DNA of 64,000 bases from Phallusia mammillata (taxonomy: Eukaryota). Shown piece after piece: positions 79 to 51,907 of this stretch (positions within the stretch are counted from its first letter, which is position 1; every line of letters starts with the position of its first letter). A program made the position numbers and the translations under genes. Under the pieces are notes generated by a model that worked only from the letters and a program-made list of their open reading frames with translations, was not told the DNA's origin and made no database searches. The stretch is from the NCBI GenBank assembly GCA_965637545.1, contig OZ281496.1, forward strand, positions 6,696,001-6,760,000. The letters run 5' to 3'.

Positions 79-3000
79 CACTGCAGACGACTGCAATACC
101 ACCACTCGGTACTTTCTCCAATCCTGCCCGTTCATGTGTTGAACTGAAAGATGCTGGGTTAAAAGATGGAATCTACGTCATAAAACCGTCACTAAAATCG
201 TTTGAGGTAGATACCTTTTATACATTTAAAAAAATGTTTTTCAGATATACTAACTCTTAAAATATCTTATATCTTCTTGGTTTTACACCAGTGATACGCA
301 ACAAACAGTTCAGTAATTGTTTTTTACTTTGCATTAGGTTAATTTTTGTCGTTTATTTTAGCGGTTCAAGGGTAAAAAGTGTTCTGTAAAACACGGTCAT
401 TTGTGTTTGAAAGCAGATTAAGTGTCTACAACCATTTCCATTTTAATTCCCATTTACAAAAAAATGATCTGGAAAGCACTTGTTCGTAGGTTTATTGCGA
501 CATGAAAGCTGCTGGTGGTGGATGGATTCTAGCAGCAACTATTAACGACAATCTCAATATAAGAGAAACTTATGATGATTTGTGGTTTCTTACGACAAAC
601 ACTAACCAAACTTCTTTGGGTAAACTATGTAACATTAATTACACCGAAAATATATACTTATTTTTTTATTTACGATTTAAGGCTACCAAAACTGGATGAA
701 CACAAATACGTTTGGATCACTTGAAACTTGCACAAGTTCAGACTTTAAAAGTCAAGCTTATTATGAATATCAGGCAAATAACGTGTGACGTAAAAATATG
801 CTTTAAATACAACAAGGAAAACTTTCTAGGGCAAAGACATTATGTTGCGCCATGTTCCAAACCAAACACCACTGAATTTTAGCAGAGAGCAGAGTTTTCT
901 GCAATACCAAACTGCAAACGGATTTATGGAAAATTATGGAGGAAATTTGCAAAAAATATACAATCACCATTACCCACTGAAGCCAGCGAATGGTATTGCT
1001 TTTTTGTTTGACGGTTCTAATAAAAAACATTGCTGATGCTACAAGTTGCTGTATTTGGGCATGCATTAAATACCACCACTGCTACTGAAAGAACCGACCT
1101 GTTATAAATTAGCTAAAGTTTAGTTTAAAACCAAAATATATCGTTTTTTCATTGTTTGTAATTTCAGCTTTTTACCCTGATGTGAATTCAATCCTGGATG
1201 GGCTTGCTGCAAAATCAACAGAAATCACAAATTTAATTTCTGATTTCTATTTTTACGACTACGGTTCAAGCGCTAATCGGCTCCATGATAATAATTTGTT
1301 TGGGGAAAATTACGGAATGGAGGTACGTGATCTAAGTTTCACATTGTCGTTCGAATTTAAACGATAATTGATTATTTAGATCTCATTCTACACATTTCAA
1401 TATTGCTATTTCAAGTATGGATCTTGTCAGACCCGCCCGTTAACCTACGGATTGGATTACAAGTAAGTCAAATTTGTCAAGTCTACTTTTCGATGTGAGA
1501 TTTACGTTTTTATTAAGATGCGACCTTGGCAACATTATGCAGTCCAGCAGAAAAATACATCCATTCGTTGCTTTGTTTGCTGTGGGAAATTTTGGTCAGT
1601 GCCCCGGTTCCATAAGAATTTACGTAAGCGCAAATTGCGTGATGACCTTGTTGCATTTTAAATGGGTCCTTGATTTTTCAGGTGGACGGCCGTCGACCGG
1701 TAACGGATTCAAACGTTCTGTACAAAGGCAATCACACTCTCAACAGTTTCTTTTTACATTATGAAGCGGGATGTAAATATGGCGTGACGAATGCCAGCTT
1801 GTGTGATGTTTTGTTTTATACCATCAATGTTAAGGTAAATAGTGTTGGTCTGCTATTACTGCGCATAGATATAATTACTTCACAAATGTTGTTTTGAACT
1901 TCCTGTCTGCTAAAGCAGTGCTGGTAAAATATAAGCGATTGAAATATTAAAAAAATTAAAAAAATGTTGTCCATTTTGGCCATGGCTCTAAGTAGTTTTT
2001 GTGTAAGTTTCTGATGTATGTTGTAGTGATTTATCATCATTTTTTTCCAAATTATTTAACAAAAGTCAGTCCGAAATATTTGGCAAAATGTTTGCCTGTA
2101 GAATAAAAGTAGAAAAAACTTGAATAAAATGAATAATTTATATTTATTTATTTCTGAAAACAAAACTGTGCATTAGAATAAGATTGACAGTAACAATTTT
2201 GTTGACAATATCCTTCTGCTATCACACAGGATTGGAAATCATCCGGAATTCCCGAAATTAGTTTAAGCAACTATCAATACAGTACATACTATGATTTTGA
2301 TTGGAGAATTTACAGCGCTGTATCCAACACGCTTTTTGGTTACACATTGATTTCGAGGTAAACTGTTGTTCAATGGTCTGTTGTTTAAACAAAACTTTTG
2401 GAAAATTGTTGATTAATTTTAATATTCAGAAAAGGTGGCGTTTTAATTCCTGAAGCAGAGATCAACAATGTTACTTACAAAATATTGGAAATAATTTCAG
2501 AAACAGACAACTTTTGTAAGTAAAAAATTATCAGTTTACACGTCAATCATTTATGCATGCTTAACTATTGAAAAGGTGAAAAACATTATTCGTTATGTAT
2601 ACTATTTTTTAAGCATTGTCGTCATCGGTGCACAGAGATTGTCGAAACGTCTGAACGATGTATTCTATATACACCAGTACCTTGGCAGTAATGTTTATGC
2701 TTAAATTACTTTTCAAGTCCGTGTATAGTGTTCCTAAGTAGACTATTTTTTTTCTTAATTGTGCTTAAGCTTTCCTATTACTTTAATCACTTTTGTTTTT
2801 GCTTAAGGCCCGGATTGCTTTTATGATGATGACGTACTTTCAGTACCAGTTCAATTTTCCATCGGAAACGATTCAGTGGTTAACTCGATGCTGCCACCAA
2901 GTGTAAAACCTCTACCGACCGGTTTTGTTCAGTTTCGTGCTTATGGAAGAACTGGGAGCATCTACGCAATGTGTCCTGCTGTAAAGTAAGACTGCTATGT

Positions 3001-3446
3001 ACAAAACAGTGGTTGTAGAGTACGTGTAGATATCACACCACCCTTTTGACTAAAATTAAATAAATATTCAAACATTGTTCAATTGACACTAAAGGGGGAT
3101 TATTGAATTTATAAATCTGTATAAGGTGGTACAAAAAAAGTTTAGGTAAGACTTATTTAGTGGGATGTACTTTTTAAAAGCTCCAATTTGTTTAGAGTGA
3201 ACGATTGGCGAAGCGAATTTGTTTGTGTTGGAGGAATGAAAAATCCAGATTCTCGATACTTGGACGATTGCAATGATTTTACAAGTAACTTTTCTGTTTC
3301 TTTTAAAGTTTTCTTTGAACTTATCTTTTATTCTCACTGTAGATTGGAATGGATTGCTGTTTACCATCTTGAACGAAACGACTCCAGTTGAATATTCTCA
3401 TTCACAAAGTGATTTAGATTCAACAATTATGATATTTTATCGTTAA
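79..3446 (+). CDS. Intelectin-like gene copy A, multi-exon, 5' exons lie before the window; reading frame intact
   Basis: Hand-spliced exons translate to PLGTFSNPARSCVELKDAGLKDGIYVI..FE|VYCDMKAAGGGWILAATI..|YQNWMNTNTFGSLETCTSSDFKSQAY|GKDIMLRHVPNQTP..LQYQTANGF..YPLK ... TGFVQFRAYGRTGSIYAMCPAVK|VNDWRSEFVCVGG..DDCNDFT|DWNG..DSTIMIFYR*. These match intelectin hallmarks (RSC, CDM-GGGW, NW-N-NTFG, GFVQFR, terminal FYR). All introns are GT-AG except one GC-AG (774), phases are consistent, and no stops were found. Confidence 0.92.
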
Positions 3447-4444: not shown

Positions 4445-4856
4445 GAAGAACAGGAAGCGTTTACGAAATGTGTCCTGCTGTTAAGTAAGTCGCTCCAGGT
4501 TCATAAAACTGTACAAAAAATACAACAGTAAATATAAAAAAATTATTAAAGGTTTTAAAGTTACTGGGCTCTAATTAATGCCTAATTATACATCATCCGA
4601 ATTTAAGGTAAATGATTGGCGAAGGGAATTTGTGTGTGTTGAAGGAATGAAGAATCCAGATAATTCCTACTTGGATGACTGCAATAACTTTACAAGTACA
4701 AACAGTTTGTGTGCTCAAATATTTTTCTTCAAATATATTTTGTGTCAACCAGATTGGAACGGATTACCGAACAATGTAGTAAAGAAACTTACTCCAGTTG
4801 ATTATGCTCATTCTCAGAGAGACTTGGATTCGACAATTATGATATTTTATCGATAA
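4445..4856 (+). pseudogene. Orphan 3' fragment of an intelectin-like gene (end of the GFVQFR exon plus the last two exons)
   Basis: RTGSVYEMCPAVK|VNDWRREFVCVEGMKNPDNSYLDDCNNFT|DWNGLPNNVVKKLTPVDYAHSQRDLDSTIMIFYR*. No upstream exons. The acceptor before VNDW reads TTTAAG-GTA, one base short of the phase used in the paralogs. Confidence 0.85.
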
Positions 4857-9320: not shown

Positions 9321-10190
9321 TTATCTCTGCTTCCAAACAACGGAATATGTCGTCGAAGTCCACGGAAATCGCAAATTTAATTTCTGATTTCTATTTTTAA
9401 GATTGTGCTATTGACCCCTCCCGTTTGTATGACAGTGAGTTATTTGACGATGCTTGCGACATATCGGTAGATTTGTTGTATTACACGTGTAGTTGTGAAT
9501 GGAACAGTTCCTACACATGTTTCCTTGGAAACACGGCATGTTTATTATCCAACAGAGTACCAAATCAATTGTCCAAACAACCCAAGTATGTTGTGTGATG
9601 GATTTTGAATAAGTTTTTTCATTTTTATTATACCTTGTTTCTTTACCCATGTTCTCTTTATGTCTTTTTGGTGAGGAAAAGAACAGAGACCTAGGTAACA
9701 CAATTCACAATACTTTATTTTTTGCTCTGTTTGCCTAAAAACTTTGATTACTGCATTAGTTACTTTGATTTTATGATAAGTGAACACTGCGTTATTGCTT
9801 CTTTCAAAGATTTATGGGCCCAAATCTTACGCTAACGACGGAAATAAATGCGCAAGGTCAAAGCATCATGGAGCGTAAAAAGGAGAAGGATACAACTGTT
9901 GGCTCATAAATAAACGAAATATAGCTGTACCGCATTCATGACACATAATACTAGATAGTGTGAATGATTTTATAAAGATACGACAGAAACCAAAGATAAA
10001 GGGGCCATTTTAGTTCTTGCTTTAGAACTGATTGTACTTTGGTCCTGACGCGGATATAATTGCACCAGTGCAAGTCCGGTTTGTATTTTCCATCTGTAAT
10101 TTCTGCGGTAAAATGACATCACGCTCTAGCGAACGTTGACCTACCAAGGATATCTCTGTGCACACAATGGGGTAATTCCCAGTTCGTGCG
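9321..10190 (+). pseudogene. Highly diverged intelectin-like pseudogene fragments
   Basis: Exon 9321-9466 has a phase-1 acceptor and reads ..SSKSTEIANLISDFYF*DCAIDPSRLYDSELFDDACDIS|GT, colinear with AAKSTEITNLISDFYFYDY..GME of copy A; TAA at 9398-9400. 10027-10190 shows TDCT, APVQ..FSICN, LP..G..QF(R)A, resembling the PDC..VPVQFSIGN..LPP..GFVQFRA exon with frameshifts. Confidence 0.65.
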
Positions 10191-13518: not shown

Positions 13519-14853
13519 GGTGTGTGATATTTGCTAATATATAAACTCTAAAACAAAATGCTTTGTTTGTTTCTTTTTTGTTTCAGAATCAAAATGAAGA
13601 AACCTATGAATGTAAAATGCTCTGTTTATTTCTTTTTTGTTTCAGAATCAAAATGAAGAAACCTATGAATGTAAGTCCACGACCAAGAAATTTCAACCAA
13701 AGAAGTTTGATTTGTTTTTTGCATTTTACCTTAAAAGGAATTCTGGTCCAAACTTTGCTGTTTTTCTACATTCTTTAGTTAAAATCACTAAAAATTGTTA
13801 CCCTTTAGTAAAATATGTTAACTTGGTAAAGAAACATGTACATGAATAAACGACTTCCAAATATACAATTATGGCAGATAAAATAAAGTGCTTTTGAGAA
13901 CTCATGTCAGCATAAGATGTGAAATTCTTAATCATGATTATTATCTATAATTTCACACCAATACAGGCAACGGGTCAAACTTTTTATAACACAACTAAGT
14001 TTGTACCAACAAGACCACCGCTTGGTACTTTCCCCAATCCCGCCCGTTCGTGTGTTGACCTTAGAGACGCTGGGTTTAAAGATGGAATCTACGTCATACA
14101 ACCGTCGCTCAAATCGTTTGAGGTTTTAAACGGAATTTAAAGTTTGATAAATACAGTTAGATACAGCAAATTAATTTTCATGTCTGAACGTAGATTCCAT
14201 CTTTAAACCCAGCGTCTCTCAGGTCATTTGATAAATACAGCAAATTGATTTTCATGTCTGAACAAGCGTTTCTGTCACAAAACAATGAACAACTATTTGC
14301 GAATTTCTAGAAAGATAAACACCGTCCCCTCTCTTGTGCATAGGTTTACTGTGACATGATAGCTGTTGGTGGTGCATGGATTCTCCCGGCCACTATAAAC
14401 AATATTGTGCCTGAATCTGATTATCAATCATGGTTTCCTACGACAAATGATAATCACCGGAAGAACTTTGGTGAAAAAATTTGAAGTAGCCTAAATATTG
14501 ACAATTTTTTTAACCTACACGTTGTTCAATTGTAGATCACCAAAACTGGATGAACACAAACATATTTGGATCATTTGATAATTGCACGAAATCAGATTTC
14601 AAAAGTCAAGTTTATTTTGAATATCAGGCAAACTATCTAGTTTTAGGTTCTTAAGTTTGTGTTACACACGAGTATTACTTTAGGGAAAGGACATTATGTT
14701 TCGTCATGTCCCAAATCAAACACCACTGGAGGCCAATAGAGAGCAGAGTTTTCTGCAATATCAAACTGAAAACAGTTTTTTGGGATATTATGGAGGAAAT
14801 TTGCATAGAATTTTCAATTTGCATTACCCATTGAAACAAGCTAATGGTTAGAT

Positions 14854-15442
14854 CAGTGGTTCCCAACCGGGGAGGAATTTTATGAGTTCAGGGGAGAAGT
14901 TTCAAAAAAAACTGTAAAAAAAATACATTACAAATGTTTCAAAATATTTTTGTAAATACATTGATGTCCATTAAAATTTGTACGCGGTTCACATTTGAAA
15001 CCGGTTGTAAAGGATTCTGAAAGAGACATCCCTAACTATAAGGTCTACTTGTATATACGGCCGCATGGTACGTTTTAGGCGCTTAAATTAATCGATTATT
15101 GTCGTAACAAAGTCCATTGTTTTAACTTTTTTTGACAGTCTGGCTGTTGCTTAGTTGCTTAAAAACTGAACAGTTTACAGTTAGTAAACAGTGTATGTAA
15201 TGAAACTAGATTGTTAGTTACGTATCATTCTCTTGTGTAGATTTTAGCTGTAGCCACTGTCACAAACTGCGCCGCGTGTACAACTTTCCAGAGCGCAAAC
15301 AAGAGCAAATTTCGCATTGAGTCGTAATGTGAAATAAATTGCTATAATTTTTTTATGTTGTATTTTTTGTCTTATGGGGAGGAATGAATAGTTCGAAAAT
15401 GGGCAAAGGGAGGAATGTAGCAAAAAAGGTTGGGAACCACTG
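14854..15442. mobile_element. hAT-type MITE (589 bp)
   Basis: Perfect 15-bp TIR CAGTGGTTCCCAACC / GGTTGGGAACCACTG. 8-bp TSD GGTTAGAT at 14846-14853 and 15443-15450. Confidence 0.95.
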
Positions 15443-17989
15443 GGTTAGATCAATAAGTGCGGCAGATCAATACCGTATGACTGATTGATGTACCAGCAAG
15501 AATGTCGAAGCTTTAAGTGGAATTGGTACCCAGGAAATAAGCTTAACAAACCCAGCACGTTTTAAACCAAACTTTTTAAATTGATTTTTCACAATCATAC
15601 CAATGTTTAATCTTTTTTTGTACTTGAAGTTTTTTATCCTGATGTAAGTTCAATGTTGGATCGACTTGCTGCAAAATCAACAGAAATTACAGACTTAATT
15701 TCTGATTTCTATTTTTACGATTATGGTAATAGTTCATATTTGCTCTATGACGAAGGACTGTTTGGAACCGAACACGGAATGAGGGTAGGTCATATAGGTT
15801 TTCTTATCCTTGTCCTAAAAAAGTGTTTGTGGAGATTTTATCCAGCGCCGGTCAAAGATGCAAAATAGGCAACTGTCCAAATGACTATGTTGAATATGGG
15901 TTGGATGATGGGTAGGTCAAACCGTACATCAATTTTCGTTTTTACTTTAGTTTTGTTTTTCACATTGAAACTAAAGATGTGGAAATGGGAACTTGATGCA
16001 ATCAAGGAGAAAGATTCATCCCTTCATTGTTTTTTTTTGCTGTGATAAATACGGAACACTGTTTGGACGACCTCCGATTCGTTGTACGAGAATATGGCGG
16101 TAAAATGTTTCAAAATTAAACTTTGATTATTCACTGTTACAGCTGTACGGTCGACTACCAAACACCGATTCAACAGTTAAATATACCGGAGGCCACACTC
16201 ACAACAACTTCTTTTTATATTATGAAGCGGGTTGCAGATATGGTTTGCCTTATGCCAGCTTGTGTGATGTTTGGTTTTATGTCATCAATAAAAAGGTCTG
16301 TTGCATTTGTTGTCAAATATATTTTTAGTCCAAATTTTGATTTTATGTTTTGAGGATTGGAAATCATCGGACTCTCCAAATGCATTTTTTAGAAAGTCTT
16401 CATCTAGCATATATTATACTTTTGAATGGGAAATTTACTAACCGGTATCCAACACACTCTTTGGTTACACAATGGTTACAAGGTAAATTACTATTTCTGC
16501 AGATAAGGAAAAAAAAATAAAGTACGAAATAAAAGTATCGAAATTGAACAAACACAAATTTTTGGAGTTTTGATTATCCAAACAGAGATAAACGCAGTCA
16601 CCAACAAAATGCTGGAAATTATTTCCGAATATGACAACTTGTGTATGTAAAACTTATGTTCGGTTATTTACCTATAATTATATGGCATGCGGCTCCTCCA
16701 GTCTTTGGTTGTTTCAGGTCCGGATTGCACTTATGATGACGACGTACTTTCAGTACCAGTTCAATTTTCCATCGGAAACGATTCAGTGGTTAACTCGATG
16801 CTGCCACCAAGTGTAAATCCTCTACCGACCGGTTTTGTTCAGTTGCGTGCTTATGGAAGAACTGGGAGCGTCTACGCAATGTGTCCTGCCGTTCAGTAAG
16901 TAAGACCGGTGTATATATAATGATTTACACTAAGATAGAGCAAGAGTACAGAAAACCTCGTTCGCGCTGTAATGTCTTTGTAACAGCTATTGTTAATTGT
17001 TTTTGGTAGGGTAAACGATTGGCGAAGCGAATACGTGTGTATTGGAGGAATGAAAAACCCAGACTCTCGATATTATGATGACTGCAGTGATTTTACAAGT
17101 AATTATACAAGTTATTTTTTTGGACATATTTACGTACTAGTTTGTAAAACATTTTTGTATTAAACAGACTGGGACGGATTGCCGAAAACCTTGTTGCACG
17201 AAACAACTCCAGTTGATTATGCTCATTTTCAGAGAGATTTGGATTCAACAATTATGATATTTTATCGATAAATTTTGTCAAATTGAAGTAACACATTTGT
17301 TCAAAATACTACTTTTAAGGATTTTATTGAAATAACTGTATACTTTGGTTATAAATAATAATTCCTGCTTATATGTTGGATAATCTCCTAGAGTTCATTG
17401 TTAACTCATATCTTTGTTTGTAGATATATTGTAAAAATAATTACAAGATTACCTAATCAATTAATTTGTTGATATATGTCCGATAATCTTTTTGAAATCA
17501 TTTTGACTCTTGTAGCGGCCACGTGCTTCATTTGTAGATGCATTGTAATTACAAATACAAGACAATAAAATCCATGTAACCACAAAAATATGTATTTTAT
17601 TTGAGATACCTAGAATGAAACGTTTTAGGGTCAAATTCAGCAAGTTGGATTAAACCTATATTAATGATGGGATAATTCCTGAAAGTGGTATTTACCAATC
17701 GAGATGAAATTTTAATCTGGGATTAAATAGGCAAAATTTTAATCCTGTCCTCCCAGGTTTTAGGATGGATTAAGTCGAATTCTGGGGTGTTTTGGGTATT
17801 TATCCTTAGAAAAAGTCGGTTTTGTGTTTAATCAAGCTATATTTGCAGTTGTTAACCACAAATCATAAAATAGTATTTAATAAAAAAATCGAATTAAACA
17901 AGGATATTATTGGCCGGTGCTTAAGGATGCAGTAGTCGCCTTGTGTCACCCCCCAGAAATCACGTCGTACGCCCATGGTTCCCAGCAGA

Positions 17990-26168: not shown

Positions 26169-29100
26169 ATGAATTATGGTGGTGTTAATATTGATGCTAA
26201 TGCCTATGAAACTATTCAGATGAACGAAGGACAAAATCATCATGTTCCAGGTAATAAAGTAACGCCAGGTAAATGTCTATAAAGTTAATGTATAAAATTA
26301 GTTTGATTGTATTTTTTGCAAACCTACAACAAATAGTTAAAACTGAACAAGATAAATTGGTAATAGTCCATTCAACAAAACTTAAATCTACGTGATACCT
26401 TTATTTGATGATCACTTCTAACACTTAACTGCAAAATGTTTTGGTCTCTGGCTAATCATGTATCTTGTATTAATCAAGCAGAATTCTGGGAAACATCCTC
26501 AAATGTGTATGAAAAACCTATATCAAAGTTTCATAGAGAAAATGGCGATACATCAAGTACCCCAGGTGCATTTGTGCAAGAATATGGTAAGGTTTTTCTG
26601 AAAAAGTTTATCGAAATCCTAATATCGTTAAACATTTTTACTTGAACTCAGAAAATGTTAAAATACAATCCAAAAGAAGTGAAAAAAAGTGTGTGCAAAA
26701 ACCAAGCTTCTCTAAACTAAGTATTATGTTGGTGTGTGTGATTGTAATCCTTGCTGCTTTGGCGATAGTTTTCGGAATGTTTTATTTCATGAAAGACCAG
26801 GTGTGTAGTGTTTGTTTAGTCAAAAAGAATATGCAATTTTTTATGCAACAACATTTTTTGCTTCAGAACGAAAGGGAAAAAGTTAATGAAAGTAAGTCAT
26901 ATATTCGAAGAGATCCTTTTCAAGATTTTTAACTTTCTTGGGGTTAATAAATTGGTTCAAAAGTAGTAACATTACCGAATTTGAGAAACAAGATCTGAAA
27001 ATTAAGGACATTTTATGAAAAGTAGTAAAAATTCACAAAGCTGTCCAAGGGATCGTAATGTTAGTTTCACAAATTTGCTCAGAAACTCACGGTATAGTTT
27101 TTTCATGGATATTTAATTCCTCATTGTTTTCTTATACGTTTGCAAATATCATTTGCATAGCACCAAGGACAACTGGACGAACAAGTTTAAACACAACTGA
27201 GTATGTGACAACAAAACCCACTTTTGGTAAAGTTATATAGTTGTTGTTTGTATATTCAGTTTAATTTGTGTTGACAAATTATTTTTTCAGCATCACAGAC
27301 CACTGGTCAAACAGCTTTGAACAGAACTAAATATGTGACAACAAAGAAACCATTTGGTAAAGATGTATAGTTGCTTCAAAATGCGGTTCAATTTTAGTGT
27401 TGACAAATTATTATTTTAGCACCGCTGACAACTGGACAAATAAAGTTTAACACAACTGAATCACTACCAGCCGCAAAATCACCGCTTGGTACTTTCCCTA
27501 ACCCTGCCCGTTCATGTGTAGAACTGAGAGATTCTGGATTCAAAGATGGAATCTACGTCATTAAAACGTCACTAAAATCGTTTGAGGTATTTTTCAAATC
27601 ATTGAGGTATTTTTCAAATCAAGTCTTTATTTTTTTATCATTGTTTAAACATGTTTCTCAAACCTTACGTTTTAAACTTATGAGATATGCAACAAATGTT
27701 TTGTAAACTACTTGCTAAAAGGCTTTCTTTAAGAGAAACCAGTTATTATTTTTTTTAGTATTTGGAATGCAGATAATCAATGCAGAAGTGTGTGAAAAAA
27801 ATGAAAAATAAAAACAAATGTGGAAAATGATAGAAATACAGAAATTTATCTTGAATTTTCGAAAATGATTTAGTTTTTTCTTGCATTTAGGTTTACTGTG
27901 ACATGATAGCTGCTGGTGGTGGATGGATTCTCGCGGCAACCATTAACAATAATAATTTTAATACGACTGGGGCTAATGGTGGATCATGGTTTCTTATGAC
28001 GTCAAACAATCACCAAAATTACTTGAGTAAATTTAACAATGTGACACAAATTGCAACAGCGTTTCAAAATTTTAATAATTCCAGATTATCAAAACTCGAT
28101 GAACACAAATACATTCGGAACATTTGACAATTGTACAAGATCAGATTTCAAAAGTCAAGCTTATTCTGAATATCAGGTAAATATTATGTGCTGTAAAAAT
28201 GTGGTATATTTTTTACAACGGGAAATTTCCAGGGAAAAGACATTATGTTACGTCACGTTCTAAACCAAACACCACTGGGAGCCAGCAGAGAGCAAGTTTT
28301 TTTGCAATATCAAACGGAGAACGGTTTTATGAAAGATTATGGAGGAAATTTGCACAATTTGTTTAATAATCATTATCCATTGAAACCAACAAGTGGTAAT
28401 ATACTTAAGCTTGCCATAATTTGTTCTTGACAGTGGTTGTCATATTGTTTTTTATTTTTCTGTAAACAAAGCATATTACGCATACAAAGTAAAGAATCAT
28501 TTTTGGTAACAAACAACAATAAATACAAATTAGTCATATCGAGTATTCGTAAGCGAGTATGTTAACAATTGTCTTTGGAAAGATAGTTTATTTGATTGCA
28601 CTTCTGAAACACCTTATTTATTTCTTACACTTTACTTTTGTTCTATTTTCAGTTTTTTACCCCAAAATAAATTTGATGTTGGATCGATTTGTAGCACAAT
28701 CTTCAGAAATCCGAAACCGCATCTCTGATTTCTATTATTATGATTATAGTATTCATTCAAGCGGGCTATTCGATAGTAATGTTTATTCGTCTCACGGAAT
28801 GCAGGTAAGTTATCTGCATGACCGTCTTTTTGTGGAATTACAAACAACAAGTTTTTACACAGGTGTCATCTAGCACAACTCAGTCTTGCTATCCAAGCTC
28901 GTATAAAGCAAATTGTCAATTAGGGAGTTTTCGATATGGGTTGGATTATACGTAAGTCAAATATTGCTTTTGGTTTTCCGGTTTGCTGGTTTCACGTCAA
29001 CACTTACTTTTTCGAAACTAAAAAGATGCGACCTTGGCAATATGTTTCGATCAAGCCGCAAAACGCACCCCTTCATTGCTTTGTTTGCTGTGGGAAACTT

Positions 29101-30582
29101 TGATCATTGCTTTTCCAACATAAACCTTTGGGTAAAGAAATACTGCATTAACAATTTGTCTCAATAAATCCCATTGTATGTTTGATATGTTCAGGTTTTA
29201 TCTTTTCGACCGAATACAGATTCAATACATTTGTACAAAGGAAATCAAACTCTCAACAATTTCTTTTTACATTATGAAGCACAATGTAGATATGGGTCGT
29301 CACATGCCAGCTTGTGTGATGTTTGGTTTTACGTCATTAACACCGGAGTAAGCAGCGTTCTTGTATGTGTTTGATCTTGTTTTCGCAAATGCCATAACCA
29401 AACCATTTTTATACCATTTCGGTAATATATGAACATTTTATGCAACTCCATCAGATTCGTTTAAGTAGTATTAAATTACTTTCAAATTCTAATCATCTCT
29501 TTTTTGCTCTTTGTCACGTAGAATTGGAATTCATCTGCAGCGCCAACTACAGAACCGTACAAAATAACACATTCATCACACTATTATTTTGGATGGAGAA
29601 TTCGTGAAGCTGTATCTAACACACTTTTTGGTTACACAATGGTTTCAAGGTAAACCGTTTTAGCTGAATGTTGTGTGTAAAACTGACTTAGACATCGTAA
29701 TATTTTCTATTGCATATGACTTTATTGACATGTTTAGGAAAAATGGAATTTTGATACCTAAAACAGAGTTCAACGCTTTTATTTACAAAACACTTGAAAT
29801 TATTTCAGAGACAGACAACTTTTGTGAGTATCAGAAGTTTGAAATAGCTAATACCCTTTGTTTAAATTTAAAGTTAATTGCCATGCAAATATAAGTTTAT
29901 TGATTTTTTTTAATTCCCTTTTTTCAATTTACCAGTGAGTTTCCAAATTATTTTTTAAATCTTACTTGCATGTACATTAAATAGCTAAAGCTTTTCGATA
30001 CTTTTTCTCACTTCAGGTCCGAATTGTTTCTATGATGATGACGTACTTTCAGTACCAGTTCATTTTTCCACTGGAAACGATTCAGTGGTTAACTCGATGC
30101 TGCCACCAAGTGTTAAACCTCTACCGACCGGTTTTGTTCAGTTTCGTGCTTATGGAAGAACTGGTAGCGCCTACGCAATGTGCCCTGCTGTGAAGTAAGT
30201 CGCTTTTTTGGTAAACTGTTTAAAACATACATTTACAGTAATCGATTTAAAGATTTGTAGTTTCATGATGTGCCTAAACTAAACAAATTGAATTATTTAT
30301 CTATTTTCTGAATTTTTTAGAGTGAACGATTGGAGAAGCGAATTTGTGTGTATCGGAGGAATGAAGAATCCAGATACTTCCTATTTGGATGACTGCAATG
30401 ATTTTACAAGTAAATTACCATTTAGTGCCCTTGTCCATTAAACATTTTTTAACTTGTAAACTTTTCAATTAAACCCAGATTGGAACGGAATGCCGAATAC
30501 TGTAGTCCAAGAAGTTACTCCAGTTGATTATTCTCATTCTCAGAGAGATTTGGATTCGACAATTATGATATTTTATCGATAA
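26169..30582 (+). CDS. Intelectin-like gene copy C, complete: type II transmembrane intelectin with Thr-rich stalk and inserted module
   Basis: ATG 26169 MNYGGVNIDANAYETIQ..; exon 26479-26586; TM exon 26652-26800 (SIMLVCVIVILAALAIVFGMFYFM); 25-nt exon 26867-26891; stalk exons at 27161, 27291 and 27420; then all intelectin and insert exons to ..STIMIFYR* (TAA 30580-30582). Every intron is GT-AG, phases are consistent, and no stops were found. Confidence 0.9.
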
Positions 30583-36249: not shown

Positions 36250-37450
36250 AAGGCTAAGAAGATCAAATCAAATGCAGGACGACTACATGCCAAGCCTGGA
36301 AAGACTTCGAGAAGTGCCACCGTTCCGGTTTTCCTGCATTAATCACGGAGCAATGTTTGGAAGTAGCAAGAAAATGGGTACAGCGTCTCGCGCCGCCTAA
36401 AGAAAAAGCAGACCAACATAGAATAGCTTGGGCTACATCGTTTCCACGGCTTCTCACGTTTACCACGAAAGAAAGGAATCTACAACCGCTCGCTAAAATC
36501 GTTTACAAAAATGCTTTAACCATCGGGAATGTTCTTACCAACTACAGAGGCTTGGCACATGGACGTATGAAACAAATTGCCACCGGCCAATCGCGTCCAT
36601 GCAAAAAGTGCGCGTTGTGCGGAAACCATAGCGTACATAAGGCGATGGTGTATGAGCAGTGTAATTTTGCCACACGCGGCAAAGATATTAGATTAAAACA
36701 GGTGCTGAACTGCAAAAACTATGCTGTGTATGCGGCCACTTGCCGCATGAGTAAAGAACAATACATCGGGCAATCAAAAAACCGTTTTAGCACCCGATGG
36801 AACCACCATAGATCGGTATGGAAAGAACATGTTATTAAAGAAGGTAACGATAATGCAGCGCTGTTGCGCCATTACGAAGTTAAACACCCTGAATTCTTCG
36901 CCACCTATCCCGATATTGCAGAGTGTTTTTGTGTCACGTTTTTAGAACAGCCGCCTTTTAAAGACTTGGACGCTTGTGAAGCCAAGTGGCTTAAAATTAA
37001 AGCTACTATTAACATTCAAAAAATGGTTTTGCCCAGGGTGCGATAACATCATTTTATTATTTTATATATTTTTTTATTTCTTTTACTGGTTTTTAACGGT
37101 TTTATTTGATTTTTCATTTGAATTGGGTTGTTTGTTTGTGTCCACTCCAGAGTTTTTTCGTTGCCCCTGGACTAGACGGTTATCTCGTCTCTCCGCTTTT
37201 CCTCCTTTTTTATCAGGTTGCACTGTTCCCTTGTCGCTTGTTGCAGTGTGTGCCTTTGGTGTAGCTTAGACGCAGTTCTGTTGCAGATCTTGCATAGTTA
37301 GCAAGGGCTTGTAGCAGGTTGCCGTTTCTCTTTGATGTGGTTAATATGTATTTAGTTCATTGCTTGGTTTGTCTTACTTTTACACCCGTTGTTTCACAGA
37401 ACGACTGAAGATGCCCTTTTGGGGTGAAATATATATCGTTTAACAACTTT
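36250..37450 (+). mobile_element. 5'-truncated Penelope-like element, family A (thumb, Cys linker, GIY-YIG; ORF 36357-37046)
   Basis: CKKCALCGNH linker, CKNYAVYAATC..YIGQSKNRFSTRWNHH GIY-YIG domain, T-rich 3' tail with a hammerhead motif. Paralogous to 59093-60547. Confidence 0.9.
37400..37440 (+). ncRNA. Minimal type I hammerhead ribozyme motif
   Basis: AACGA CUGAAGA U GCCC-UUUUG-GGGU GAAA UAUA UA UCGUU: stem I AACGA/UCGUU, conserved core, palindromic loop III. Confidence 0.75.
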
Positions 37451-43934: not shown

Positions 43935-46900
43935 ATGGTTGTAACGAAGACATCGCTGAAGGCGATAGTGGACAAACTAAATTCTCTCTACCGAGAAGCA
44001 GAAGAATTAATGATCGATAAACAGAATGTAAAAGTCCTGAAGGAGAAGCAGAAGCAAGTCTCTTTAACTTTCGAAGAGTACGTCGAAATGCACTTTGATT
44101 ACGTCAGTGCTTTGAAACGTAAGAATGCCAAGTCTAAGGCTAAGGAGGAGCTTAGCAGCTTGCGCAAGGGCAAAGAAGAATTCGAAAATCGCATCGACGA
44201 GTGGCTGTCTGGCATTGAAGAGAATCACGACGATATTGTTACCGTGAAGTCAAAGCGAAGTCACAATTCGCATGCGTCAAAGTCAGCTACTGTGCGATCA
44301 TCGATTGCCAGTTCTCGTTCAAGTACGAAACGCACCGAAGCTATCGTTAGAAAGGAACTAGCTGTTCTCAAGAGAAAGCAACTTGAGGAAAGACATCGAG
44401 CAAAATTGCAAGTTGATCTCTTAGAAGCAGAACACGAGATTCAAGCCGCAGCGGTTGAAGCTGATATCTGGGAACGTCGTTCGTTTGTTGGAACACGCGA
44501 CGTACAGAATTTAGATTCCGTTTCTACGACGTCAGTCCCTTGTCGAATCGAGGAACATGTGAAGGAAACGCCGAAATCACCGTCGCGGCCAGAATTGAAA
44601 TCAAAGACCGCTTTGGAAACCCCAGCTGCGCAAGAGCCGTTACTGGCCGAAAACCAACTAGATTTGTCTAACGGTGACCCACCGAACATGGTTAGTGTTG
44701 AGCACAAACCACAGGTCAGTGATTTAATGCACGTTGCTTCACTATTGAAATATGGCCTCCATTTACCCAAGCCCGAGTTACTGCATTTCGATGGCAACCC
44801 GTTACATTACACCCGTTTTATGACAACGTTTGATGAATGTATTGCTAGCCGTGTGCAAAGTGACAAGTCCAAACTAAACTATCTCATTCAGTATTGTTCT
44901 GGTGAGGCCGAAAAAATGATATTGTTTTGTTCGTGTATGGACGATGACGGCTGCCGCAAGGCACGGAAAGTTTTGCATGACCATTATGGTCGTCCGTTTA
45001 TTATAGCCAGGTCCTATGTTCAACGTCTGACCCAGGGTCCGTATTTGAAAGCCGATGACAGCGAAGGGCTGCAGGAGCTTGCACGTCACTTGGATGAATG
45101 TCATGTCACTTTGTCTCATTTGGGTTATTTTGCTGATATAAATAACTTTGAACATCTCCTAAGTATTGCTAGACGTTTGCCACTAAACATGCAACACAGG
45201 TGGAAACGACATGCTGGCGAGATCGAGCTGCGTGGAAGCGAACCGCAGTTTTCGCATTTGGTGGAGTTCGTCCAGAATGAAGCGCTGATTGCGAACACAC
45301 TGTTTGGAAGAATGATGACGTCTAAGAAGGACAGCGGACCACCGAAACCGGTCAAGCCCCCGCCAAGGATGTTAAGAGCCTCGTCACATGCTGCTTCCGT
45401 GTCAACAGGTTACGACGGAAGGCAAGCATCGACAAGCAAGCCGTCAGGTGACGAGTGTCCAATCTGTAATGTGTCTCACGCTTTAGCGCAATGTAAAGTG
45501 TTCAAAGGAAAGCAGTTCGGAGAACGGCTGCGGATAGTGCGAAGAGCTAGGCTCTGTGACAACTGTTTTGCTAAAGGTCACATCGCTAGGAATTGTACAT
45601 TGCAGAGTTCTTGTTCACTAGAAGGATGTCGTCGAAGACATCACATGCTATTACCTCATGATTTACCTGAACCAGAGTCGGACAACCTTTCACAGCGAAG
45701 AGAGCAAAGGCCAAGTCCAGCAAAGAATGGAAGTGCCTCAAAGACCGTGGTAACCTCAACTTCGTGTGCAGCCAAGTCGTCCGCACCTCAGGTTGGCCAA
45801 AACGTATATATGAATATTGTCCCAGTACGGGTCAGTGGCAAAAACGGAAAGGAGGTTGAAACGTACGCCTTTCTGGATTCCGGTTCAAACTCGACGATGT
45901 GCTCGAGACGACTGCTAGATATGCTTAACCTGACAGGTGACAAGATTGAATTTACACTTTCAACGATTAATGGGAAAACACAGAACAACAACGGTTCTGT
46001 CGTTAGTCTATCTGCTAGACCGCTAGATGGCGCAGGAGTTGTTGACCTGCCATATGTGATTATGGTAGATAATTTACCTGTTGTTCCGAATAGGTGCGAT
46101 AAAAAATGGTCGCATCTTCGTGACGTTAAATTCACGACGCCATTAAATGATGAAGTTCTACTGCTGATCGGACTGGATGTACCAGAAGCATTTTGGATCG
46201 AAGATGAGAGAAGAGGACGACGCGGAGAGCCGAGCGCAGTCAAGACAGTTCTCGGTTGGTCTCTGTTCGGTACTGCTTCGTCTCGTTCTGGCAGATGCAG
46301 TGTGCAGCACGTCCAGGTGAACCACGTTAACTTGTCTAATGAGTTGTTGCATCAACAAGTAAAGAAGATGTGGGAAACTGAGTTTAAAGATTCCAGTCTA
46401 GGTTCCAGTGTCGGTATGTCAAAGGAGGACAAATACGCGATGAAGCTAATGAACGACTCTGTGAAATTAGAAGATAACCATTACTGTTTGCGATTGCCGT
46501 GGCGTGCAGGATCGCCCAATCTGCCAAACAACCGCACACAGGCTGTGCAAAGGCTGAGCTACCTAAAGCGTCGTTTGAATAACGACAGTCACTTGTGTCA
46601 GAAGTACAAGGAGACGATTAACGGCTATCTGAAGAATGGATACGCGCAGCGTCTCAAAGCGGATGATCGAAAGGAAGAGAAGAGGTCAATTTGGTATTTG
46701 CCACATCACCCGGTTCTGCACCCGCAGAAGCCAGGGAAGGTCAGAGTGGTGTTTGACTGCGCGGCAAAATTTCGGGACACGTCCTTAAACAAGCAGCTGT
46801 TGCAAGGTCCCGACCTAATGAATAGCCTGGTTGGCGTTCTTTTACGGTTCCGGCAAGAGGCTATTGCCATTGTTGCCGACGTGGAGGCTATGTTCCACCA

Positions 46901-47753
46901 AGTGAGAGTGGATCCTAGGGATATTGACTGTTTGCGATTCGTGTGGTGGCCGGACGGAGACATGACGAGGCGGCCAGTAGATTTCCGAATGTTGGTCCAT
47001 TTGTTTGGAGCGACGTCGTCGCCGTGTTGTGCAAGTTTTAGTTTGCGGCGTACCGCAGACGACAATTGTCATGCATTTTCAGAAGAGACCGTTGCTACAG
47101 TGCGACGCAATTTTTATGTGGACGACTGTTTAAAGTCTGTCGCTACTTTACAGGAAGCCAAGCAGTTGGTGCAGGAGATTCGCGCGCTTTTGCAGCGTGG
47201 CGGTTTTCACTTGAGGAAGTGGTTAAGCAACGACGAAAGAGTCTTAGATGATGTACCTAAGAGCGACTCAGCGAAGTCTTCATTCTCTTTGAAAGATGAC
47301 ACCGGTCAAGTGGAACGTATTCTTGGGGTGAGCTGGAATTATCGTACCGATACGTTTCAATTTGATGTCAAGGTAAAGGAAAAGCCGATCACCAGACGAG
47401 GCATATTGTCTGTAGTGAGTTCTCTTTTTGATCCTTTGGGGTTTGTTGCTCCAGTTGTCTTGCAGGCGCGAATGTTGCTGCAAGAGTTGTGCAGACAGGG
47501 TGTTGGATGGGACGAGGAAGTACCAGAAGATATTGCCACAGCGTGGCGCCATTGGATTTCCGAGTTGCCGGAACTTTCCTCTGTTCAAATACCCAGATGT
47601 TTGAAGGCAAGCCGATTGGGAAGAATCAAGGTATGCGAGTTGCACCATTTTGCCGATGCATCATCGCATGGTTACGGAACCGTGTCATACCTGAGGGTTG
47701 AAGATTTAATAGGCGTGTGTGTTGTACCCTTTTGTTTGCAAAAGCTAGACTAG
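43935..47753 (+). CDS. BEL/Pao Gag-Pol, N-terminal part (Gag, three Cys/His knuckles, protease, RT, RNase H start)
   Basis: LPKPELLHFDGNP Gag motif, CPIC..H..C, CDNC..H..C, CSLEGC..HH, AFLDSGS protease, YVDD RT, HHFADAS RNase H. Confidence 0.95.
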   Translation: MVVTKTSLKAIVDKLNSLYREAEELMIDKQNVKVLKEKQKQVSLTFEEYVEMHFDYVSALKRKNAKSKAKEELSSLRKGKEEFENRIDEWLSGIEENHDDIVTVKSKRSHNSHASKSATVRSSIASSRSSTKRTEAIVRKELAVLKRKQLEERHRAKLQVDLLEAEHEIQAAAVEADIWERRSFVGTRDVQNLDSVSTTSVPCRIEEHVKETPKSPSRPELKSKTALETPAAQEPLLAENQLDLSNGDPPNMVSVEHKPQVSDLMHVASLLKYGLHLPKPELLHFDGNPLHYTRFMTTFDECIASRVQSDKSKLNYLIQYCSGEAEKMILFCSCMDDDGCRKARKVLHDHYGRPFIIARSYVQRLTQGPYLKADDSEGLQELARHLDECHVTLSHLGYFADINNFEHLLSIARRLPLNMQHRWKRHAGEIELRGSEPQFSHLVEFVQNEALIANTLFGRMMTSKKDSGPPKPVKPPPRMLRASSHAASVSTGYDGRQASTSKPSGDECPICNVSHALAQCKVFKGKQFGERLRIVRRARLCDNCFAKGHIARNCTLQSSCSLEGCRRRHHMLLPHDLPEPESDNLSQRREQRPSPAKNGSASKTVVTSTSCAAKSSAPQVGQNVYMNIVPVRVSGKNGKEVETYAFLDSGSNSTMCSRRLLDMLNLTGDKIEFTLSTINGKTQNNNGSVVSLSARPLDGAGVVDLPYVIMVDNLPVVPNRCDKKWSHLRDVKFTTPLNDEVLLLIGLDVPEAFWIEDERRGRRGEPSAVKTVLGWSLFGTASSRSGRCSVQHVQVNHVNLSNELLHQQVKKMWETEFKDSSLGSSVGMSKEDKYAMKLMNDSVKLEDNHYCLRLPWRAGSPNLPNNRTQAVQRLSYLKRRLNNDSHLCQKYKETINGYLKNGYAQRLKADDRKEEKRSIWYLPHHPVLHPQKPGKVRVVFDCAAKFRDTSLNKQLLQGPDLMNSLVGVLLRFRQEAIAIVADVEAMFHQVRVDPRDIDCLRFVWWPDGDMTRRPVDFRMLVHLFGATSSPCCASFSLRRTADDNCHAFSEETVATVRRNFYVDDCLKSVATLQEAKQLVQEIRALLQRGGFHLRKWLSNDERVLDDVPKSDSAKSSFSLKDDTGQVERILGVSWNYRTDTFQFDVKVKEKPITRRGILSVVSSLFDPLGFVAPVVLQARMLLQELCRQGVGWDEEVPEDIATAWRHWISELPELSSVQIPRCLKASRLGRIKVCELHHFADASSHGYGTVSYLRVEDLIGVCVVPFCLQKLD

Positions 47754-51079: not shown

Positions 51080-51907
51080 ATGAAATCACAGGATTTCGAC
51101 TTCGAGTTAAGTGATGTTTTTGATCAGAGGTTTATGGAACGTGGAAATGTAAAACGACATATTCTGACACCCACTATTAAAAAACATTATCGATGTGATG
51201 TTTGTGAAAAAACTTTTGTCCAAAGTGGAAATTTGAAAATACATATGTTGACTCACACCAAAGAAAAACCTCATCGATGTGATGTTTGTGAAAAAGGCTT
51301 TGCTCGGGGTGGAGATTTGAAAACACACATGTTGATTCACACTAAAGAGAAACCACATGGATGTGTTGTTTGTGAAAAGAGTTTCAGTATCAATTCAAAT
51401 TTGAAAAGGCACATGTTGACGCACACTAAGAACAAACCCAATCGATGTGATGTTTGTGAAAAAAGATTTGCTGACAGTGGAAGTTTAAACAGACACATGT
51501 TGACCCACACTCAAACGAAATCTCATCAATGTGAAGTTTGTGAAAAGAAATTCAGTATCAATTCAAATTTGAAAAGACACATGTTGACGCACACTATGGA
51601 TAAACCCCATCGATGTGATATTTGTGATAAACGATTTTCCCAAAGCGGAAATTTGAAAACCCACATGTTAATTCACACTAACGAGAAACCTCTTCGATGT
51701 AATGTTTGTGAAAAAAGGTTTTCTCGAAGTGGATATTTCAAAACACACATGTTGATCCACACTGGAGAGAAACCACATCGATGTGATACTTGTGATAAAC
51801 GATTTACCCAAAGCGGACATTTGAAAGCCCACATGTTGCTTCATACAAAACAAAAACCCATTAATATTTTGGTTTCGGAAAAAGATTTAATGTTATTTCA
51901 AGTTTGA
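51080..51907 (+). CDS. Intact C2H2 zinc-finger protein ZF3, 275 aa, eight complete fingers
   Basis: Uninterrupted ORF with eight CxxC-12-HxxxH units and mostly T(K/M/N)EKP-type linkers. No KRAB, SCAN, BTB or ZAD domain visible in this exon. Confidence 0.9.
   Translation: MKSQDFDFELSDVFDQRFMERGNVKRHILTPTIKKHYRCDVCEKTFVQSGNLKIHMLTHTKEKPHRCDVCEKGFARGGDLKTHMLIHTKEKPHGCVVCEKSFSINSNLKRHMLTHTKNKPNRCDVCEKRFADSGSLNRHMLTHTQTKSHQCEVCEKKFSINSNLKRHMLTHTMDKPHRCDICDKRFSQSGNLKTHMLIHTNEKPLRCNVCEKRFSRSGYFKTHMLIHTGEKPHRCDTCDKRFTQSGHLKAHMLLHTKQKPINILVSEKDLMLFQV

What the first reader, a model, noticed from the sequence alone, without database searches (positions are those of the whole stretch)
1168..2515. Six-exon, 237-codon module inserted inside the intelectin domain, flanked by phase-1 introns
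Seen: six exons (155+83+106+153+128+86 = 711 nt in copy A) sit between ..YPLKPAN and (G)PDCFYDDD.. in copies A, B and C. Both flanking introns are phase 1, so skipping them gives YPLKPANGPDCFYDDDVLSVPV, nearly colinear with human [20 protein letters not shown]. The module has six conserved Cys and I do not recognise it as a known domain. Inference: exon-shuffled domain insertion into a lectin loop, with a possible short canonical isoform.
Basis: partly seen in the sequence, partly recalled or inferred. Interest (0 to 1): 0.85.

Follow-up and report, generated by a model that had tools for sequence, protein, structure and literature searches.

The report
Extra domain nested inside sea-squirt intelectins
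Three neighbouring sea-squirt genes for intelectin-like sugar-binding proteins each carry six extra exons that place a whole additional ~237-residue beta-sandwich domain inside the lectin fold, an old and conserved sea-squirt layout that I found in no paper and no domain library, and whose function is untested.

Summary
In copy A, six GT-AG exons (155+83+106+153+128+86 = 711 nt, 1168-2515) lie between two phase-1 introns inside an intelectin-like gene. The upstream exon ends at 992, not 1012. Copy C (28653-29823) has the same intact layout. Copy B (15630-16642) has a TAA stop and a 1-nt insertion in the module, but intact flanking exons.

The module codes for protein: A-C dN/dS is 0.40, against 0.21 for the lectin parts. 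It sits at the same site, with the same exon sizes and phases, in Ciona and Clavelina genes, so it is an ancient, fixed part of an ascidian intelectin subfamily. The window is Phallusia mammillata or a very close relative.

Spliced RNA contigs from paralogues join module exons 5 and 6 to the 3' lectin exon. I saw no skipping joint, and the Ciona hits held no module-less isoform, so the proposed short isoform is unsupported though not excluded.

Pfam, PHROGs, NCBIfam and PDB sequences give no match. An AlphaFold model of the Ciona homologue (pLDDT 80.5) is a beta supersandwich. It resembles unnamed phage proteins (TM 0.75) and, more weakly, the N-terminal domains of GH65-type glycosidases (Z 9.1).

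The same module was already noted by this scan elsewhere in this genome.

The parts
84..992 (+). Copy A, 5' half of the intelectin domain (exons 84-206, 490-619, 682-782, 830-992). Its upstream exons lie outside the window.
   Evidence: Spliced alignment, all GT-AG, open frame. Weak Fibrinogen_C match in exon 490-619. Colinear with vertebrate intelectins.
1168..2515 (+). Copy A nested module: six exons 1168-1322, 1380-1462, 1518-1623, 1682-1834, 2230-2357, 2430-2515 (711 nt, 237 codons), with a phase-1 intron on each side.
   Evidence: dN/dS against copy C is 0.40. Homologous to the Ciona module P0003:255-492.
2808..3446 (+). Copy A, 3' half of the intelectin domain (exons 2808-2985, 3196-3284, 3343-3446 including the stop).
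   Evidence: RNA contigs join 2517->2810 and 2981->3192.
14015..14846 (+). Copy B, 5' intelectin exons (14015-14122, 14344-14470, 14536-14639, 14684-14846), intact.
15630..16642 (+). Copy B module: exons 15630-15784, 15835-15911, 15977-16083 (1-nt insertion in a T run), 16143-16295, 16355-16482 (TAA stop), 16536 or 16568-16642.
16718..17271 (+). Copy B, 3' intelectin exons (16718-16895, 17010-17098, 17168-17268 plus the stop), intact. Joined directly to 14846 they give an open canonical-length frame.
26169..28395 (+). Copy C, 5' part. Cytoplasmic tail, transmembrane and stalk-repeat exons (26169-27592), then intelectin exons 27891-28026, 28085-28176, 28233-28395.
   Evidence: P0002 residues 1-222 match at 78-100%. 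Transmembrane segment read from the frames. Exon model.
28653..29823 (+). Copy C nested module: exons 28653-28804, 28863-28951, 29026-29131, 29195-29347, 29522-29649, 29738-29823 (714 nt), intact.
30017..30582 (+). Copy C, 3' intelectin exons (30017-30194, 30321-30409, 30479-30582 including the stop).
4447..4853 (+). Relic of the last intelectin exons of a further copy.
   Evidence: tblastn, 57-85% identity to residues 457-532 of the copy A protein.
9347..9532 (+). Relic resembling module exons 1-2.
   Evidence: tblastn, 37% identity, E 2e-6.

Best explanation
The six exons encode a separate, folded domain of about 237 residues. It is a beta supersandwich with short N-terminal helices and a long C-terminal helix. 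It is a permanent part of the protein, nested in the loop (human [20 protein letters not shown]) that links the fibrinogen-like first half of the intelectin fold to the second half, which carries the sugar site.

The genes belong to an old ascidian subfamily of intelectin-like proteins, seen here in Phallusia, Ciona and Clavelina. Most members are type II membrane proteins; one Ciona savignyi member has a collagen tail instead. They are distinct from the canonical secreted intelectins that tunicates also have.

Shown: the gene structure, coding constraint, conservation of site, exon sizes and phases across three genera, inclusion of the module in spliced RNA of paralogues, and the fold class of a Ciona homologue.

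Inferred: the domain is displayed beside the lectin head and acts as a second ligand-binding surface, most likely for glycans. This would make a two-headed surface recognition receptor that has diversified by tandem duplication. Copy B is a recently disabled copy.
For: Gene models with canonical splice sites and open frames in A and C.

Module dN/dS is 0.40 over 236 codons, against 0.21 for the lectin parts.

An exon-4 profile search of 1.84 billion proteins found only ascidian proteins. At least 9 Ciona intestinalis genes, plus Clavelina and C. savignyi proteins, carry the module at the same site.

Exon sizes 106/103, 153, 128/131 and 86 and both phase-1 borders are conserved in the Ciona and Clavelina loci.

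The Phallusia mammillata protein P0002 links tail, transmembrane segment, stalk, lectin half and module in one product.

Spliced RNA contigs join exon 5 to 6, exon 6 to the 3' lectin exon (2517->2810 in two runs), and on to the next exon.

The AlphaFold model has pLDDT 80.5 and pTM 0.84. BFVD hits reach TM 0.75 at E 5e-8. VIA-align hits of Z 9.1-6.5 are almost all supersandwich domains of carbohydrate-active enzymes, and the Atlas gives GH65_N at TM 0.52.

HMMER splits the lectin match to XEEL/intelectin-1 around the module.
Against: The RNA contigs are 83-96% identical to copy A, so they come from paralogues or alleles. Copy A's own transcript was not shown, and exon 830-992 had no cover.

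The fold was modelled on the Ciona homologue (about 30-40% identical to the window's module), not on the window's own protein.

The whole-ectodomain model failed (pLDDT 43.8), so the nested geometry rests on sequence alignment only.

Z of about 9 is only slightly above the background best scores stated by the tool.

No binding function was tested, and the module could equally mediate oligomerisation or protein contacts.

I did not check whether the Phallusia protein records derive from cDNA or from gene models.
Confidence: 0.75

Rival explanations
1. The module is an optional cassette. Because both flanking introns are phase 1, the six exons can be skipped together to give a canonical short intelectin next to the long form.
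For: The phase 1-1 symmetry keeps the frame when the module is skipped. In copy B the skipped form is an open 289-codon lectin frame although the module carries a stop and a frameshift.
Against: No 992->2808 joint appeared in four runs, although cover of the upstream exon was nil. All joints seen include module exons. No module-less isoform of the Ciona genes appeared among the 120 best hits of 277, where it would have scored near the top. B's module has the same pairwise dN/dS (0.37-0.39) as A-C, so its damage is recent and fits a young pseudogene. B's frameshift lies in a run of nine T and could be an assembly error.
Confidence: 0.12
2. The six exons belong to a separate gene nested in an intron of the intelectin gene.
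For: None beyond the fact that the module folds on its own. P0001 is a 166-residue Phallusia record that contains module sequence only.
Against: There is no start or stop of its own, and the frame is continuous with both lectin halves in A and C. RNA contigs splice exon 6 onto the 3' lectin exon. P0002 and all Ciona and Clavelina products contain both lectin halves and the module. P0001 starts in the middle of the exon 1/2 junction, so it is a fragment.
Confidence: 0.02
3. On origin: the module was captured by an ascidian ancestor from a phage or bacterial surface protein (horizontal transfer), rather than coming from an older animal domain.
For: The best structural matches are unnamed phage and viral proteins (TM 0.75, 0.55 and 0.59). 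There is no animal family in Pfam. Within the searches run, the module occurs only in ascidians.
Against: There is no sequence-level match to phages by tblastn, PHROGs or an IMG/VR scan. The language-model search points to unnamed cnidarian clusters at 0.94, which hints at an animal source. The module has old spliceosomal introns shared by three genera.
Confidence: 0.2

Closest known systems
Intelectins / X-type lectins (human ITLN1, Xenopus XEEL and XCGL-1, ascidian plasma lectins)
   Same: Both halves of the domain align to solved XEEL and intelectin-1 (E 2.7e-46 for the Ciona homologue). The window copies are colinear with vertebrate and Styela intelectins. They keep the YCDM..GGGW, HVPN, GFVQFR and IMIFYR motifs and the Trp aligned with W288.
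   Different: About 237 extra residues interrupt the fold. Copy C and most relatives have a cytoplasmic tail and a transmembrane segment instead of a signal peptide. Residues aligned with N260 and H263 of ITLN1 are replaced (R and F in A and C). The role of N260, E262 and H263 is from my memory of Wesener et al. 2015; W288, Y297 and E274 are as cited in PMC12800186. The exon structure differs from a canonical Styela gene.
Galactose-mutarotase-like beta supersandwich domains (N-terminal domains of GH65 enzymes/kojibiose phosphorylase, C-terminal domain of heparinase III, aldose 1-epimerase)
   Same: Overall fold class. VIA-align gives Z 9.1 (177 residues aligned, rmsd 4.0) to 7fe3 and Z 9.1 to 3wiq, and nearly all of the top 50 hits are domains of this kind. 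The Atlas gives GH65_N at TM 0.52.
   Different: There is no sequence similarity (4-10% identity; no Pfam match to PF03636). Foldseek TM is only about 0.3. Here the domain is nested in a lectin of an animal, not attached to an enzyme.
Unnamed viral proteins in BFVD (A0A8S0HZG8; A0A6J5NIC1 and A0A6J5PYY2 of uncultured Caudovirales phages)
   Same: These are the best structural matches: TM 0.75 by the query, E 5e-8, probability 1.00.
   Different: Identity is 9-14%. No sequence search links them to the module. Their function is unknown.
Domain-in-domain (nested) architectures and 1-1 exon-shuffled modules of animal extracellular proteins
   Same: A self-contained domain sits in a loop of a parent domain, and the module is bounded by symmetrical phase-1 introns.
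   Different: The module was found in no other gene family. No intron exists at the site in the one canonical tunicate intelectin examined.

Membership tests
Intelectin (X-type lectin) family | Sequence homology to solved intelectins over both halves of the domain, including the fibrinogen-like start | tested here: met
   XEEL E 2.7e-46 and ITLN1 E 2.6e-45, in two blocks, for Ciona homologue P0003; window copies A and C colinear; partial Fibrinogen_C match.
Intelectin (X-type lectin) family | Ligand-site residues of ITLN1 (N260, E262, H263, E274, aromatic box W288/Y297) | tested here: inconclusive
   in A and C, E262 and W288 are kept, N260 becomes R and H263 becomes F. The E274 and Y297 columns are ambiguous. 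W288, Y297 and E274 are taken from PMC12800186; the rest are from memory.
Intelectin (X-type lectin) family | Secreted, soluble oligomer | tested here: not met
   Copy C's 5' exons encode a tail and a hydrophobic transmembrane stretch and match P0002 residues 1-222. This is read from sequence only. Copy A's 5' end is outside the window.
Galactose-mutarotase-like supersandwich / Glyco_hydro_65N | Shared fold with clear structural score | tested here: inconclusive
   Z 9.1-6.5 to many such domains and TM 0.52, but Foldseek against PDB gives nothing below E 1e-3, and Z 7-8 is the stated background.
Galactose-mutarotase-like supersandwich / Glyco_hydro_65N | Sequence membership (Pfam PF03636 or related) | tested here: not met
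   No Pfam hit on the module of P0003, P0025, P0023 or P0002, or on the window's exons.
Exon-shuffled mobile module (class 1-1) | Symmetrical intron phases at both borders | tested here: met
   Phase 1 on both sides in A, B and C and in the Ciona and Clavelina loci.
Exon-shuffled mobile module (class 1-1) | Same module present in unrelated genes | tested here: not met
   All sequence hits are intelectin-like proteins of ascidians. The searches were limited by quota and by the word filter.
Exon-shuffled mobile module (class 1-1) | Pre-existing intron at the insertion site in module-less relatives | tested here: not met
   In the Styela clava canonical intelectin locus L001, the site lies inside exon 2754-2976. 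Only one gene was examined.
Alternatively spliced cassette | Transcripts joining the flanking exons directly | tested here: inconclusive
   No such joint, but there was no cover of exon 830-992 and only contigs were laid, not reads. No module-less Ciona isoform.

The most novel reading that the evidence does not exclude
Ascidians built a family of membrane-anchored, two-headed recognition receptors by wedging a virus- or bacterium-derived supersandwich domain into the intelectin fold. The nested domain, not the altered canonical sugar site, would then be the main and diversifying ligand-binding surface.
Probability: 0.2. Interest if true: 0.75.

Novelty: new variant of a known kind. Interest (0 to 1): 0.55.

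Why it matters
Intelectins are studied as soluble, single-domain innate immune lectins of chordates. This is a conserved, multi-copy ascidian subfamily that is membrane-anchored and carries a whole extra domain of an unnamed family inside the lectin fold. That would be a new receptor architecture in the sister group of vertebrates. It is also a clear case of domain nesting, with intact exon boundaries that can be dated to before the split of Ciona, Phallusia and Clavelina. The domain has no family entry, so defining it would also name its phage relatives. In four full-text searches I found no paper describing it, and NCBI calls the Ciona genes 'uncharacterized'.

Tried and rejected
Searches that found nothing:
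- Pfam on single exons gave nothing for the module.
- PHROGs, NCBIfam, and PDB sequence searches with one module and with a profile gave nothing.
- An IMG/VR scan with the C. savignyi module gave no relative.
- tblastn against 50,697 phage genomes gave no match.

Runs that failed or were uninformative:
- The whole-ectodomain AlphaFold run with 8 sequences failed (pLDDT 43.8), so I could not show the nested geometry or the distance to the sugar site.
- The look-up of encoding contigs had no record for P0008.
- No listed holder of the stretch is on record as RNA. The four runs laid are RNA by the tool's guess and held only 1-3% of copy A's words, and what was laid came from paralogues.
- The protein-atlas feature search gave only unnamed cnidarian clusters without identifiers. 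This is a lead I could not follow.

Corrections to my own earlier readings:
- My first model of copy B, with A as template, suggested four frameshifts. Better templates reduced this to one frameshift and one stop, and an alternative acceptor at 16536 rescues exon 6.
- I rejected B as evidence for a module-less product, because its module shows the same long-term constraint as A and C.

Full report
**What is in the window**

The window is AT-rich animal DNA with no N. tblastn with the spliced copy A product finds three tandem intelectin-like genes on the + strand: A (84-3446), B (14015-17268) and C (27482-30579). It also finds a relic of 3' exons at 4447-4853 and a relic of module sequence at 9347-9532.

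The Phallusia mammillata protein P0002 (CAB3262707.1) matches copy C's upstream exons 26169-27592. The first exon is 100% identical and two others about 95%. The window is therefore P. mammillata or something very close. The rest of P0002 is at most 71% identical to any copy here, so it comes from another paralogue or haplotype.

**Checking the observation**

I wrote a small spliced protein-to-genome aligner. It allows GT-AG introns in three phases and penalises frameshifts.

| Exon | Coordinates | Length (nt) |
|---|---|---|
| 1 | 1168-1322 | 155 |
| 2 | 1380-1462 | 83 |
| 3 | 1518-1623 | 106 |
| 4 | 1682-1834 | 153 |
| 5 | 2230-2357 | 128 |
| 6 | 2430-2515 | 86 |

- They sum to 711 nt and are flanked by exon 830-992 and exon 2808-2985. 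Both flanking introns are phase 1.
- The whole 13-exon model is open to the stop at 3444-3446.
- 237 open codons at this composition would occur by chance about 2e-8 of the time.
- Copy C has the same layout (152, 89, 106, 153, 128, 86 nt) and is intact once the donor of its third lectin exon is placed at 28176.
- Six cysteines are shared by A, B and C.

**Copy B**

With better templates (copy C and P0002), B's module shows two lesions:
- a 1-nt insertion inside a run of nine T in exon 3;
- a TAA in exon 5 where A has AGC and C has GAA.

Exon 6 can still be read in frame from an alternative acceptor at 16536. B's seven lectin exons are intact, and joined directly they give an open frame.

B's module has the same pairwise dN/dS against A and C (0.39, 0.37) as A against C (0.41). 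It was therefore constrained for most of its history, and the damage is recent. The frameshift could also be a homopolymer error. I read B as a young pseudogene or a variant, not as evidence for a module-less product.

**Is the module coding, and is it part of the lectin transcript?**

Between A and C the module has dN/dS 0.40 (236 codons, 56% amino-acid identity). The lectin parts have 0.21 (79% identity). Exon 2 is the least conserved (12 of 27) and exon 4 among the best (34 of 51).

No listed holder of the stretch is on record as RNA. Two runs of unrecorded kind hold about 70% of its words, and the runs the tool guesses to be RNA hold only 1-3%. I laid contigs of four of those guessed RNA runs, from four studies, at 90% likeness. 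They show these spliced joints:
- exon 5 to exon 6 (2354->2456/2458, with an in-frame divergent stretch);
- exon 6 to the 3' lectin exon (2517->2810 in X13 and X5, which is the 2515|2808 intron shifted by two letters);
- that exon to the next (2981->3192);
- the first lectin exon to the second (192->488).

The pieces differ from copy A by 2-17%, so they come from paralogues or alleles. They show that family members splice the module into the lectin message. They do not show that copy A itself is expressed. No 992->2808 joint was seen, but exon 830-992 had zero cover, so this test is weak. The high depth at 2506-2839 comes from a repeat in the intron at 2632-2740.

**Relatives**

A profile of exon 4 from A, B and C, searched against 1.84 billion representative proteins, found only five true hits. 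All are ascidian: two from P. mammillata and three from Ciona intestinalis.

- With Ciona P0003, the module (residues 255-492) finds at least nine C. intestinalis genes. All are named 'uncharacterized' or 'intelectin-like'.
- An ectodomain profile adds Clavelina lepadiformis P0023 (99% cover) and Ciona savignyi P0025 (99% cover). After these come only canonical intelectins covering 24-40% of the query.
- In a family alignment the module sits at the same place in all members.
- P0025 has a collagen-like tail instead of a transmembrane segment. Its module is less derived (INDGGHDMFDSGN where the others read DGG..(M)F) and aligns at 23-33% identity over the whole length.
- No Ciona protein among the 120 best hits (of 277) is a module-less isoform of these genes. 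The shorter Ciona entries are fragments that contain the module or only the N-terminus.

**Gene structure in other genera**

I fetched three loci and aligned each product to its own DNA at 100% identity.

| Locus | Module exons (nt) | Borders / note |
|---|---|---|
| Clavelina L002 | 94, 106, 153, 131, 86 | both phase 1 |
| Ciona L003 | 174, (11), 53, 103, 153, 128, 86 | both phase 1; the 11-nt exon is probably a model artefact |
| Styela clava L001 (canonical intelectin) | none | no intron at the insertion site, which lies inside exon 2754-2976; its other introns also differ |

The last four module exons and both borders therefore predate the split of these genera. The phase symmetry is real. 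However, neither a donor gene nor a recipient intron was found, so exon shuffling remains only compatible with the data.

**Where in the lectin fold**

HMMER aligns P0003:95-605 to XEEL (E 2.7e-46), human intelectin-1 (2.6e-45) and lamprey serum lectin in two blocks:
- query 7-158 to chain 16-168;
- query 397-511 to chain 177-289.

About 238 residues thus replace about 8 residues of the loop between '...YPV' and 'DNGPxxPV'.

In an alignment with the module removed, A and C keep E262 and W288 of ITLN1, but have R at N260 and F at H263. The Ciona members have D, Q and Y at 260, 262 and 263. W288, Y297 and E274 as site residues are taken from PMC12800186. N260, E262 and H263 are from my memory of Wesener et al. 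2015. The canonical calcium and diol site is therefore probably altered, but the alignment is ambiguous at two positions.

**What the module is**

- No Pfam, PHROGs or NCBIfam family and no PDB sequence matches it, whether as exons, as whole modules or as a profile.
- I could not reference the window's spliced protein, so I modelled the Ciona homologue P0003:255-492 with a 20-row alignment that included the window's exons. The result has pLDDT 80.5 and pTM 0.84. It has two short helices, about twelve strands and a long C-terminal helix.
- Foldseek against PDB gives nothing below E 1e-3.
- BFVD gives three confident viral hits, the best with TM 0.75 and E 5e-8. All are unnamed.
- VIA-align against 48,161 chains gives Z 9.1 to GH65 alpha-1,2-glucosidase and to kojibiose phosphorylase N-domains. 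The list continues down to Z 6.5 and consists almost entirely of supersandwich domains of glycoside hydrolases, phosphorylases, polysaccharide lyases and aldose epimerases.
- The ESM Atlas gives GH65_N at TM 0.52.
- These Z values are only modestly above the tool's stated background. I therefore claim the fold class, not family membership.
- Sequence searches against phages found nothing.
- Language-model look-alikes are unnamed cnidarian clusters, which is a lead only.
- The whole-ectodomain model failed (pLDDT 43.8).

**Reading**

The module is a constitutive nested domain of an ascidian subfamily of mostly membrane-anchored intelectin-like proteins. From the fold class, the altered canonical site and the tandem, diverging copies, I infer that it most likely adds a second ligand-binding surface, probably for glycans. 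This function is not shown.

A separate nested gene is contradicted by the spliced joints and by the continuous frames.

**Literature and earlier notes**

Four full-text searches found papers on canonical ascidian intelectins but none on a split or membrane-anchored form.

This scan has already noted the same module at other places in this genome. Those notes gave me the leads 'shared with Ciona', 'beta-sandwich' and 'phage relatives', which I re-tested here.

- conservation of the exon and phase structure across three genera;
- the lack of an intron at the site in a canonical Styela gene;
- the supersandwich fold class;
- the collagen-tailed C. savignyi member;
- the state of copy B.

Noticed in passing
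window 26169-27592: Copy C's upstream exons encode a tyrosine-containing cytoplasmic tail, a transmembrane stretch and three ~22-residue stalk repeat exons. They match the first 222 residues of Phallusia protein P0002, whose remainder belongs to a different paralogue.
   Followed up: partly
window 43935-49711 (+): Two long overlapping ORFs (1272 and 664 aa) with Pao peptidase, reverse transcriptase, integrase and DUF5641 matches. This is a near-intact BEL/Pao LTR retrotransposon, and it accounts for the GC-rich stretch.
   Followed up: partly
window 51080-51907 (+): A 275-aa ORF made of C2H2 zinc fingers.
   Followed up: no
window 59093-60547 (-) and 36357-37046 (+): A reverse-transcriptase fragment, and an ORF with a weak GIY-YIG match. 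These are probably further transposon remains.
   Followed up: no
window 2632-2740: A short repeat inside the intron after module exon 6. It attracts many unrelated RNA contigs, including an inverted joint, and produces the depth peak in the read table.
   Followed up: no
window 4447-4853 and 9347-9532: Relics of further family copies: the last lectin exons, and a piece resembling module exons 1-2.
   Followed up: partly
window 1380-1462, 15835-15911, 28863-28951: Module exon 2 is the most variable part. Its length is 83, 77 and 89 nt in A, B and C, only 12 of 27 residues are shared between A and C, and it is bracketed by cysteines. The corresponding stretch (with most of exon 1) is missing in Clavelina.
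   Followed up: partly
P0025 (Ciona savignyi): A collagen-tailed, apparently secreted intelectin carries a less derived version of the same module (motif INDGGHDMFDSGN). The module is therefore not tied to the membrane-anchored form.
   Followed up: partly
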